DNA of 63,470 nucleotides, counting the filler, from Octopus bimaculoides (lineage: Eukaryota), in the NCBI RefSeq assembly GCF_001194135.2. It is 6 parts of 5 records of this genome, joined end to end, with 100 filler letters (N's around TTAATTAATTAA, not from the genome) between each part and the next. Parts side by side here need not be neighbours in the genome. Positions count along the whole stretch, not along the records: positions 22,587 to 33,911 come from NC_068982.1; 5 more parts are not named here. One strand, given 5' to 3'. The notes beneath the pieces are model-generated. The model was not told the origin of the DNA, searched no databases, and was given only the letters and a program-made list of their open reading frames with translations. This document shows positions 28,400-28,920 of this stretch, in pieces; within the stretch, counting starts at the first letter, position 1, and each line of letters opens with the position of its first letter. The position numbers were made by a program, and so were the translations under genes.

Positions 28400-28920
28400 C
28401 AGAAGAAGGTGTTATCTAGCCCCACTTAAACGTGGATGTTCTGTTAGAACAGATTTTACTGCGGTAGATACTGTGAAAGAAGCTCTCATATTAGCTTTTG
28501 GTGCAAAATGCACGCTTGATTATATCGCTAGCAGGGAGATAAGTCTCCACCAAGTCCAGCGCCGAGACCACTAGATCACGTGATTTCGACCTCCCTTGGT
28601 TTCATCAAAGATGGACACTCGACCTCTAGAGATAGCAGCGATTCATCTCCCCGCCAGCAATATATAGAATACCAGTGCTAAAACAGGCGCTGGTGAGCTT
28701 GTTAAAAAATTCTCATTAGGGACAGAAGCAGTGTTAATACCAAGAGGTAATATTTATCCCCACTTCAACGTGGATGTTCTTTTAGAATAAACTATACTGT
28801 GGTAAATACCATGAGAGAAACTCTCATATTGATTTTTGGTGCAAAATGCATTTTTGCTTATATCGCTAGTGAGGAGATAAATCCTCACCAACTCCAGTGC
28901 AGAGACCACCAGATCACTTC
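28400..28920 (-). repeat. Retrozyme-like tandem array (~1.5 units, period 338 nt)
   Basis: Homologous sites at 28574 and 28912 (and 28566/28904). Same family as 19316-20075. Confidence 0.85.
28554..28631 (-). ncRNA. Type I hammerhead ribozyme motif (copy iii, best preserved); the 3' half of a fourth copy is at 28892-28917
   Basis: CTCTAGAGGTCGAG TGT CCATCT TTGATGA AACC AAGGGA GGTC GAA ATCACGTGAT C TAGTGG T CTCGGCGCTGG. Confidence 0.7.

What the first reader, a model, noticed from the sequence alone, without database searches (positions are those of the whole stretch)
28400..28920. Retrozyme-like element: 338-nt tandem unit carrying a type I hammerhead ribozyme
Seen: four homologous motifs (19316-19385 -, 19739-19816 +, 28554-28631 -, 28892-28917 -) give the consensus 5'-CUCUAGCR-R-YCGAG-YGU-YCAUCA-CUGAYGA-GACC-AAGGRA-GGUC-GAA-AUCACGUGAU-C/UGGUGG-U-CUCGG-YGCUGGAG. 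This has the hammerhead core (CUGANGA...GAAA...NUH = AUC), a 4-bp stem II, a 6-bp proximal stem I (YCAUCA/UGGUGG), a small internal loop and a ~13-bp distal helix. Predicted cleavage sites at 28574 and 28912 are 338 nt apart. Established: metazoan retrozymes are non-coding ~170-400-nt tandem repeats with type I hammerheads (compare schistosome Sm-alpha and newt satellite 2) that self-process to monomers and circular RNAs. Inference: this is a cephalopod retrozyme family; I do not know whether it is described. Every copy here has at least one inactivating change (C3U, G8A, etc.), so the active form is a reconstruction.
Basis: partly seen in the sequence, partly recalled or inferred. Interest (0 to 1): 0.92.

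Follow-up and report, generated by a model that had tools for sequence, protein, structure and literature searches.

The report
Decayed hammerhead-bearing retroelement, one-and-a-half copies
This is an old, mutated copy-and-a-half of a short mobile element found in roughly a thousand copies per genome; its family carries the fold of a self-cutting "hammerhead" RNA, a kind of element already known from mussels, flukes and salamanders, and this copy is dead.

Summary
The motif is real and is not a chance match. On the minus strand, 28631-28554 has the layout of a type I hammerhead. A 5'-truncated second unit starts at 28917, and the two predicted cleavage sites (28912, 28574) lie 338 nt apart.

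Reads from the same species show that 28403-28917 belongs to a repeat family: about 1000 body copies, about 300 with the hammerhead. The flanks are single-copy. The family's majority letters repair five broken base pairs of the window copy. That gives a canonical animal architecture: helix I 6 bp, helix II 4 bp, and helix III 3 bp with a palindromic ACGU loop. The motif sits at the tip of a long hairpin.

Several findings limit the claim:
- About 79% of copies have U, not C, at core position 3, and about 48% have A at position 8.
- Rfam models do not recognise the window copy.
- RNA-seq shows no cleavage ends or circles, only copies embedded in longer transcripts.
- Most copies are dispersed and 5'-truncated, not arrays.
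- The insertion is shared with two sister species, so it is old.

Verdict: a dead copy of a hammerhead-bearing non-autonomous retroelement (non-LTR retrozyme / Sm-alpha-like). It is a new member of a known kind. Catalysis is untested.

The parts
28702..28917 (-). Unit 1, 5'-truncated. It starts inside helix III (GUGAUC^UGG), 6 nt before the cleavage site, runs through the high-copy body and ends in the T6 / A-T-rich tail (28702-28714).
   Evidence: The repeat boundary falls at 28917: read depth jumps from single-copy to hundreds or thousands. Alignment to unit 2 is.
28403..28701 (-). Unit 2. It holds the 5' leader/linker (28665-28701, with a 16-nt deletion at 28695 relative to the family), the hammerhead domain and the body. 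Recognisable similarity to unit 1 stops at about 28403.
   Evidence: The 16-nt insertion TCGCGATTAGCCAGTG appears in other copies.
28554..28631 (-). Hammerhead-like motif, type I topology. The window copy has U at C3, an A.C mismatch at 10.1/11.1, two mismatches at the base of helix I and two in the distal helix.
   Evidence: Family majority letters at 28572, 28601, 28609, 28625 and 28554 restore the pairs.
28602..28608 (-). Core box UUGAUGA (positions 3-9). In the family, position 3 is C 21% / U 79%, position 7 is C 47% / U 53%, and position 8 is G 52% / A 48%.
   Evidence: Raw genomic reads. Haplotype fragments UUGACAA, UUGACGA and CUGACAA appear in loose-end consensus sequences.
28588..28601 (-). 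Helix II (AACC/GGUC here, GACC/GGUC in 67% of copies) with a 6-nt loop (AAGGGA here, AAGGAA in the majority).
28574..28587 (-). GAA, then helix III (AUC/GAU, 3 bp) with the palindromic tetraloop ACGU, then C17. The predicted cleavage lies between 28574 and 28573. These positions vary in fewer than about 8% of copies.
28521..28664 (-). Long imperfect hairpin that carries the hammerhead at its tip. Helix I is extended by further helices to about 50 bp.
   Evidence: MFE z-score is -6.3 for the window copy and -10.9 for the majority-corrected sequence.
28892..28917 (-). Remnant of the 3' half of a hammerhead (half of helix III, the cleavage site at 28912/28911, the 3' strand of helix I) at the 5' end of unit 1.

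Best explanation
28403-28917 (minus strand) is an ancient, fixed, decayed insertion of a short non-autonomous retroelement. It consists of a 5'-truncated unit followed head to tail by a nearly full unit, the 'partial tandem' typical of elements copied by Penelope-like reverse transcriptases.

The family unit is about 338-355 nt, non-coding and 41% G+C. It carries a type I hammerhead fold at the tip of a long hairpin. The geometry matches other animal hammerheads: helix I 6 bp, a small internal loop, helix II 4 bp with a 6-nt loop, and a short helix III with a palindromic loop.

Inferred mechanism, not shown here:
- Transcripts longer than one unit cut themselves after AUC. This probably happens through a double hammerhead formed by pairing of the palindromic helix III.
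- The monomers may be ligated into circles.
- The RNA is reverse-transcribed with frequent 5' truncation and inserted at A/T-rich sites.

The window copy cannot cleave. It has U3, a broken 10.1-11.1 pair and two mismatches at the base of helix I. Most of the family carries U3, with G8 or A8. So either these core variants keep enough activity, or cleavage was dispensable for most of the amplification.
For: **Repeat family.**
- The family has sharp boundaries at about 28403 and 28917, and the flanks are single-copy.
- Raw-read depth rises smoothly 5'->3': linker 60-95, hammerhead about 340, body about 1200. It then ends at about 28715-28743 next to heterogeneous A/T-rich sequence. This is the profile of 5'-truncated retro-copies.
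- Head-to-tail junctions also occur in other copies and in RNA reads.

**Hammerhead fold.**
- Five of the six majority differences inside the motif restore base pairs; the sixth lies in loop 2.
- The majority sequence meets a strict hammerhead descriptor with no chance hits in 300 shuffles or 60 Mb of random sequence.
- Core positions U4, G5, A6, A9, G12-A14, A15.1, U16.1 and C17 vary in fewer than about 8% of copies.
- The motif lies in a strongly structured hairpin, z = -10.9.
- The geometry equals the 'canonical' metazoan type I hammerhead as defined in PMC4209133.

**Fit to known classes.**
- Unit size and G+C fit non-LTR retrozymes: 170-400 nt, below 45% G+C, mussel 350-390 bp (PMC7229834).
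- 5' truncation, partial tandems and A/T or microsatellite targets are Penelope-like-element traits (PMC8557442).

**Age.**
- The same family, with the same majority letters, is present in three other species.
- This insertion is present at the orthologous site in two of them, with flanks about 5% diverged.
Against: - C3, essential in the classical core, is U in about 79% of copies in this species and about 87% by contig word depth in one run of a more distant one. G8 is A in about 48%.
- The haplotype fragments include C3 with A8, which cannot pair, so no clean covariation is shown.
- Rfam hammerhead models do not score the window copy at all.
- RNA-seq gives low coverage that mirrors DNA copy number, no pile-up of ends at 28574/28573 and no real back-joined reads.
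- Assembled transcripts run straight through the cleavage site.
- The hammerhead fold is far from the minimum-energy fold: -24.8 against -45 kcal/mol.
- No reverse-transcriptase partner was seen.
Confidence: 0.68

Rival explanations
1. The element is an ordinary SINE-like or Penelope-dependent retroposon in which the hammerhead-shaped tip of the hairpin never cleaved, or long ago stopped cleaving. On this reading the long hairpin is the functional part, for example for RNA stability or recognition by the reverse transcriptase.
For: - The U3 majority is present in all species examined, and half of the copies have A8.
- Amplification clearly continued from masters carrying these changes.
- Most copies lack the hammerhead altogether.
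- There are no RNA signs of processing.
- There are no Rfam hits.
Against: - The match to the full canonical architecture is too specific to arise without a hammerhead ancestry: spacing, the 6/4-bp helices, GAAA, A15.1-U16.1, C17 and the palindromic helix III.
- U3-A8 is a documented natural covariant in Schistosoma Penelope-like hammerheads (PMC4209133).
- No tRNA, 5S or 7SL head was found.
Confidence: 0.22
2. The unit is a fragment of the pseudo-LTR of an autonomous Penelope-like element rather than a free-standing retrozyme.
For: - Hammerheads sit in the pseudo-LTRs of Penelope-like elements.
- Partial tandems and 5' truncation are hallmarks of these elements (PMC4209133, PMC8557442).
- A 2026 preprint derives animal retrozymes from such pseudo-LTRs (10.64898/2026.07.22.740005).
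Against: - Upstream of full-length units, the family consensus runs into the T-rich tail of another unit, not into coding sequence.
- The piece holds no RT or GIY-YIG reading frame.
- Metazoan Penelope-like elements usually carry minimal hammerheads, not the canonical 6/4-bp type (PMC4209133).
Confidence: 0.07
3. The motif is a chance resemblance, or a DNA-level palindrome (foldback or MITE) with no RNA role.
For: - The relaxed descriptor met by the single window copy hits about once per 6 Mb of random sequence. A large genome therefore holds hundreds of such chance hits.
- The region is a long inverted repeat.
Against: - The family consensus meets the strict descriptor, with 0 hits in 60 Mb.
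- Majority letters repair five pairs.
- The copy-number gradient with one fixed 3' end is that of a retro-copy, not of a cut-and-paste element.
Confidence: 0.03

Closest known systems
Non-LTR retrozymes of animals (coral, mussel Mytilus galloprovincialis, axolotl; Cervera & de la Pena 2020, PMC7229834)
   Same: - A non-coding unit of a few hundred nt (mussel 350-390 bp, axolotl 330/350 bp; here 338-355).
- Below 45% G+C.
- One type I hammerhead per unit.
- Head-to-tail copies.
- A highly self-paired RNA.
- Loop 1 / loop 2 contact nucleotides not conserved, as in mussel.
   Different: - Here most copies are dispersed, 5'-truncated fragments rather than arrays.
- The core is mostly U3, with G8 or A8.
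- No abundant circular or monomeric RNA was seen, whereas mussel circles reach up to 1% of total RNA. The libraries read here may exclude non-polyadenylated RNA.
Sm-alpha / Sj-alpha SINE-like retroposons of schistosomes (Ferbeyre et al. 1998; Laha et al. 2000; summarised in PMC2770079)
   Same: - A dispersed, high-copy, short retroposon of about 330 nt carrying a type I hammerhead.
- From my own knowledge of the Schistosoma ribozyme: helix II is 4 bp with a 6-nt loop, and helix I is 6 bp followed by a small asymmetric internal loop, the same geometry as here.
   Different: - Sm-alpha has a tRNA-derived head (tRNA-Gln-like, PMC2770079). None was found here.
- Sm-alpha hammerheads have the canonical C3-G8 and cleave in vitro.
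Minimal hammerheads in pseudo-LTRs of Penelope-like elements (PMC4209133)
   Same: - Association with retroelements that insert as partial tandems with 5' truncation.
- A palindromic helix III that implies action as a dimer.
- A natural U3-A8 core variant (Cercyon elements of Schistosoma), matching the UUGACAA haplotype here.
   Different: - Those motifs lack a helix III or have a 1-bp one, have a larger helix II, and sit next to an RT-GIY-YIG gene.
- Here the canonical 6/4-bp form lies in a free-standing short unit.
Newt / salamander satellite 2 hammerhead
   Same: Tandem units of about 330 nt, type I topology, and a weak helix III with a palindromic tetraloop that works as a dimer (PMC7229834).
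   Different: In newts and salamanders it forms long arrays that are strongly transcribed. Here helix III has 3 bp and arrays are not the main form.

Membership tests
Hammerhead ribozyme, type I | Conserved core: C3 U4 G5 A6 N7 G8 A9, G12 A13 A14, the A15.1-U16.1 pair, and H17 (not G) | tested here: inconclusive
   The window copy has all of these except C3, which is U. In the family, C3 is present in 21% of copies and G8 in 52%, and all other core positions are more than about 92% conserved. U3-A8 and U3.G8 can still pair; their activity is unknown.
Hammerhead ribozyme, type I | Three helices around the core, with helices II and III closed by loops and helix I open | tested here: met
   The majority sequence meets a strict descriptor (6/6, 4/4, 3 bp plus ACGU). 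The window copy meets only a relaxed one, 4/6 and 3/4.
Hammerhead ribozyme, type I | Recognised by the Rfam hammerhead covariance models | tested here: not met
   No hammerhead match at E<=10 on 11 kb, 581 nt or 106 nt. The repaired consensus could not be submitted to the tool.
Hammerhead ribozyme, type I | Site-specific, Mg2+-dependent self-cleavage | not testable with these tools
   Indirect evidence only: there is no pile-up of RNA ends at 28574/28573, and transcripts run through the site.
Non-LTR (animal) retrozyme | Non-coding unit of about 170-400 nt, below 45% G+C, with one type I hammerhead | tested here: met
   338 nt and 40.8% G+C. No reading frame has a family match. The hammerhead layout is as in the rows above.
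Non-LTR (animal) retrozyme | Head-to-tail tandem copies (dimers to multimers) | tested here: inconclusive
   This locus holds 1.5 units. In the family, linker-containing reads are about 5-8% of 3' ends, and most copies are single and 5'-truncated.
Non-LTR (animal) retrozyme | Expressed as monomeric linear and circular RNAs | tested here: not met
   There are about 20 reads per million over the whole family, the profile follows DNA copy number, and there are no true back-joins. Copies are embedded in 0.6-2.5 kb transcripts. The libraries are cDNA RNA-seq of unknown selection, so absence is not proven.
SINE (Sm-alpha type) | 5' head derived from tRNA, 5S or 7SL RNA with an internal pol III promoter | tested here: not met
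   ARAGORN finds nothing in the window or in a partial reconstruction of the family 5' end. There is no Rfam tRNA, 5S or 7SL hit. The window copy lacks 16 nt of the 5' leader, so the test is weak.
SINE (Sm-alpha type) | Dispersed high-copy retro-copies with a defined 3' end and an A- or simple-repeat-rich tail | tested here: met
   A sharp 3' end at about 28715-28743 is followed by T6 and heterogeneous A/T-rich sequence in most copies.
Penelope-like element (autonomous) | RT plus GIY-YIG endonuclease reading frame between pseudo-LTRs | tested here: not met
   No such reading frame lies in the 11-kb piece. Upstream of full-length units lies another unit's tail.

The most novel reading that the evidence does not exclude
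The family may be a living retrozyme lineage whose masters carry non-canonical 3-8 combinations (U3.G8 and U3-A8) inside an otherwise canonical 6/4-bp type I hammerhead. On this reading they still self-cleave as dimers and circularise in tissues or RNA fractions not sampled here. That would be a natural series of core variants linked by a wobble intermediate, in a molluscan group where no retrozyme has been described in the papers I could search.
Probability: 0.15. Interest if true: 0.55.

Novelty: new member of a known kind. Interest (0 to 1): 0.3.

Why it matters
If the family once cleaved, it adds another animal lineage to the map of hammerhead-bearing retroelements. It also offers a natural set of core variants for testing how much of the C3-G8 pair a tertiary-stabilised hammerhead needs: C3/G8, U3/G8, U3/A8 and C3/A8, each present in tens to hundreds of genomic copies.

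It also shows that one family can look like both a 'retrozyme' and a 'SINE-like' element. Most copies are dispersed and 5'-truncated; a few are head-to-tail units. This supports the view that animal retrozymes are non-autonomous passengers of Penelope-like elements.

For genome annotation, the practical point is that this locus is a dead repeat copy in a microsatellite-rich non-coding region, not a functional ribozyme gene.

Tried and rejected
1. **Rfam scans** at three sizes found no hammerhead. They found only sub-threshold microRNA look-alikes on microsatellites.
2. **Mariner idea.** I suspected that the flanks, and even the motif, were remnants of a mariner-type transposase (the 117-aa frame 28885-29238). 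Pfam gave nothing. The flank is single-copy. Rejected.
3. **Fetching more family copies** through a spurious reading frame in the protein database found no candidates.
4. **Scanning public collections** (metagenome, prokaryote genome, viral) for the 20-mer ACCAAGGRAGGTCGAAATCA returned only bacterial coding-sequence coincidences without hammerhead context.
5. **tRNA-like head:** none.
6. **'Goes back ~338' joints** in RNA and DNA reads are mosaics of reads that fit one part to unit 1 and another to unit 2. They are not circle junctions.
7. **Phasing positions 3, 7 and 8** was not possible, because the read tool gives per-site counts and short clipped consensus sequences only. The clipped fragments show UUGACAA, UUGACGA and CUGACAA, so no clean covariation claim can be made.
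8. **CpG decay** of an ancestral C7-G8 explains the U7G8 / C7A8 split in kind. Its near-100% extent, against about 25% at the CpG in GGUCGAAA, means the split arose in master copies, not independently in each copy.

Full report
**What is in the sequence.**
Read on the minus strand, 28631-28554 is CUCUAGAGGUCGAG-UGU-CCAUCU-UUGAUGA-AACC-AAGGGA-GGUC-GAAA-UCACGUGAUC-UAGUGG-U-CUCGG-CGCUGGAC. This is the order of a type I hammerhead:
- the 5' strand of helix I;
- the CUGANGA box;
- a helix II hairpin;
- GAAA;
- a helix III hairpin;
- the cleavage-site C;
- the 3' strand of helix I.

The window copy has U instead of C at position 3 and an A.C mismatch at the 10.1-11.1 pair. It also has two mismatches at the base of helix I and two in the distal helix.

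A second partial motif starts abruptly at 28917 (GUGAUC-UGGUGGUCUCUGCACUGGAG). The direct repeat 28403-28579 / 28742-28917 is 81% identical. So the locus holds a 5'-truncated unit (28917-28702) followed head to tail by a nearly full unit (28701-28403). That is 1.5 units, not an array, and Tandem Repeats Finder did not report it.

**Is it more than chance?**
Rfam's covariance models give no hammerhead hit at E<=10 on 11 kb, 581 nt or 106 nt.

I wrote my own descriptor: Y3, R8, GAAA, helix III of at least 3 bp, and H17.
- With helix I at 4/6 or better and helix II at 3/4 or better, it finds the window copy. It hits 1 of 300 dinucleotide shuffles of the piece and 10 times in 60 Mb of random sequence.
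- That makes a hit rare in a 34-kb window, but expected hundreds of times in a large genome.

The single copy is therefore suggestive only. The family settles the question.

**The family.**
Contigs and raw reads of the same (coded) species show that 28403-28917 is highly repeated and both flanks are single-copy. In raw reads at about 1x coverage, the two overlapping units together collect:
- about 1200 reads over the body;
- about 340 over the hammerhead;
- 60-95 over the linker that joins one unit to the next.

Depth rises smoothly from the linker through the hammerhead into the body. It then stops at about 28715-28743, where most copies continue into T6 and heterogeneous A/T-rich sequence. 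This is the profile of retro-copies with frequent 5' truncation and one fixed 3' end. Full-length units are preceded by the T-rich tail of another unit. So full copies tend to sit in partial tandems, as described for Penelope-like elements and their non-autonomous derivatives (PMC8557442).

**The family consensus repairs the hammerhead.**
The majority letters differ from the window copy at six places inside the motif.
- Five restore base pairs:
  - 28609 U->A and 28572 A->G, at the base of helix I;
  - 28601 A->G, the 10.1-11.1 pair;
  - 28625 A->C and 28554 C->G, in the distal helix.
- The sixth, 28593, lies in loop 2.

The majority sequence is CCAUCA-UUGAYRA-GACC-AAGGAA-GGUC-GAAA-UC-ACGU-GA-UC^UGGUGG. 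It meets the strict descriptor (6/6, 4/4, 3 bp), which hits nothing in 300 shuffles or 60 Mb.

The geometry is what Cervera and de la Pena call the canonical metazoan type I hammerhead (PMC4209133): helix I 6 bp, a small internal loop, helix II 4 bp with a 6-nt loop, and a short helix III with a palindromic loop. The whole motif sits at the tip of a long hairpin (28664-28521). The folding z-score is -6.3 for the window copy and -10.9 for the majority sequence. That matches the 'highly self-paired' RNAs of retrozymes (PMC7229834).

**The weak point: the catalytic core.**
In raw genomic reads:
- position 3 is C in only about 21% of copies, and U in the rest;
- position 7 is C 47% / U 53%;
- position 8 is G 52% / A 48%.

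In a more distant species, U3 is also the majority (run X16). The remaining core positions vary in fewer than about 8% of copies.

The C7A8 / U7G8 split looks like the two decay products of an ancestral CpG. It is nearly complete, whereas the CpG in GGUCGAAA has decayed in only about 25% of copies. The split must therefore have arisen in master copies. Clipped-read consensus sequences show UUGACAA (U3-A8, a pairing combination known as a natural variant in Schistosoma Penelope-like hammerheads, PMC4209133). They also show UUGACGA and CUGACAA. I could not phase the sites, so I make no covariation claim.

Either U3 variants keep enough activity, or most amplification did not need cleavage.

**RNA.**
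- Three RNA-seq runs of the species give about 20 family reads per million. Their profile mirrors DNA copy number, with equal numbers on both strands. There is no pile-up of ends at 28574/28573, and the only 'back-joins' are mapping mosaics between the two units.
- In four assembled transcriptomes the copies lie inside 0.6-2.5 kb transcripts, some of which run through the cleavage site.
- So nothing points to monomeric or circular RNA. This contrasts with mussel, where retrozyme circles reach up to 1% of total RNA (PMC7229834). The libraries may have excluded non-polyadenylated RNA, so this is absence of evidence.

**Age and context.**
- The same family, with the same majority letters, occurs in three other species.
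- Contigs of two of them cross both junctions of this very insertion, with flanks about 5% diverged. The insertion therefore predates their split.
- The piece is non-coding and rich in microsatellites, with no reverse-transcriptase frame.
- My idea that the flanks were a mariner relic failed every test.
- No tRNA-like head was found.

**Comparison and verdict.**
The element works like, and most probably belongs to, the hammerhead-bearing non-autonomous retroelements of animals:
- non-LTR retrozymes (PMC7229834), now argued to derive from Penelope-like pseudo-LTRs (bioRxiv 10.64898/2026.07.22.740005);
- the Sm-alpha / Sj-alpha SINE-like retroposons (PMC2770079).

It differs in three ways. It is mostly dispersed and truncated, it carries U3 in most copies, and it shows no processed RNA. 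I found no paper describing such a family in cephalopods, but I could not confirm the host, whose name is coded.

This is a new member of a known kind, seen here as a dead copy. Interest is modest (0.3).

Noticed in passing
window 28311-28352 and 29110-29151: A 43-nt direct repeat (88% identical) brackets the insertion at unequal distances: about 50 nt on one side and 192 nt on the other. Depth is slightly raised there in some runs (about 2-3x), so it may be a low-copy repeat rather than a target duplication.
   Followed up: partly
window 23505-23858, 30801-30930 + 31820-32046, 24254-24344: A second interspersed repeat family (80-89% identical copies) lies next to microsatellites. One copy is split by the N gap at 31018-31799.
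   Followed up: no
window 26747-26971 versus 27209-27509: An inverted duplication of 95-96% identity surrounds an N gap (27095-27121). It is either a foldback or an assembly artefact. A similar inverted pair, 22878-23047 / 23235-23382, lies next to the gap at 23383.
   Followed up: no
window 22739-33500, many sites: Microsatellites (TG, TA, TATG, TAGA and others) produce dozens of sub-threshold Rfam matches to mir-297, mir-466, mir-3149 and similar families. All are far below the gathering scores and are artefacts of simple repeats.
   Followed up: yes
window 28885-29238 (minus): A 117-aa open frame runs from the single-copy flank into the element. It has no Pfam match and no similarity to mariner transposases, and is probably spurious.
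   Followed up: yes
window 28695 (minus strand, between c28695 and t28696): The window copy lacks 16 nt (TCGCGATTAGCCAGTG on the plus strand) that most family copies carry in the 5' leader. In those copies the leader reads AAGCTCACTGGCTAATCGCG, faintly like a pol III A box and tRNA D-arm, but ARAGORN does not support a tRNA.
   Followed up: partly
window 28549-28520 and 28887-28858 (minus): The hairpin just 3' of the hammerhead is GCGGGGA..UCUCCCCGC in the family. In unit 1 it is GUGAGGA..UCUCCUCAC, with two pairs changed on both sides. This hints at selection on structure between subfamilies, although one of the two pairs lies at CpG sites.
   Followed up: no
RNA runs X27, X30, X33, laid on window 28693-28897: The same transcript of about 1.6 kb, assembled in three independent RNA runs at depth 35-150, contains two partial family copies 149 nt apart. 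Family fragments are therefore exonised or lie in UTRs of expressed genes.
   Followed up: no
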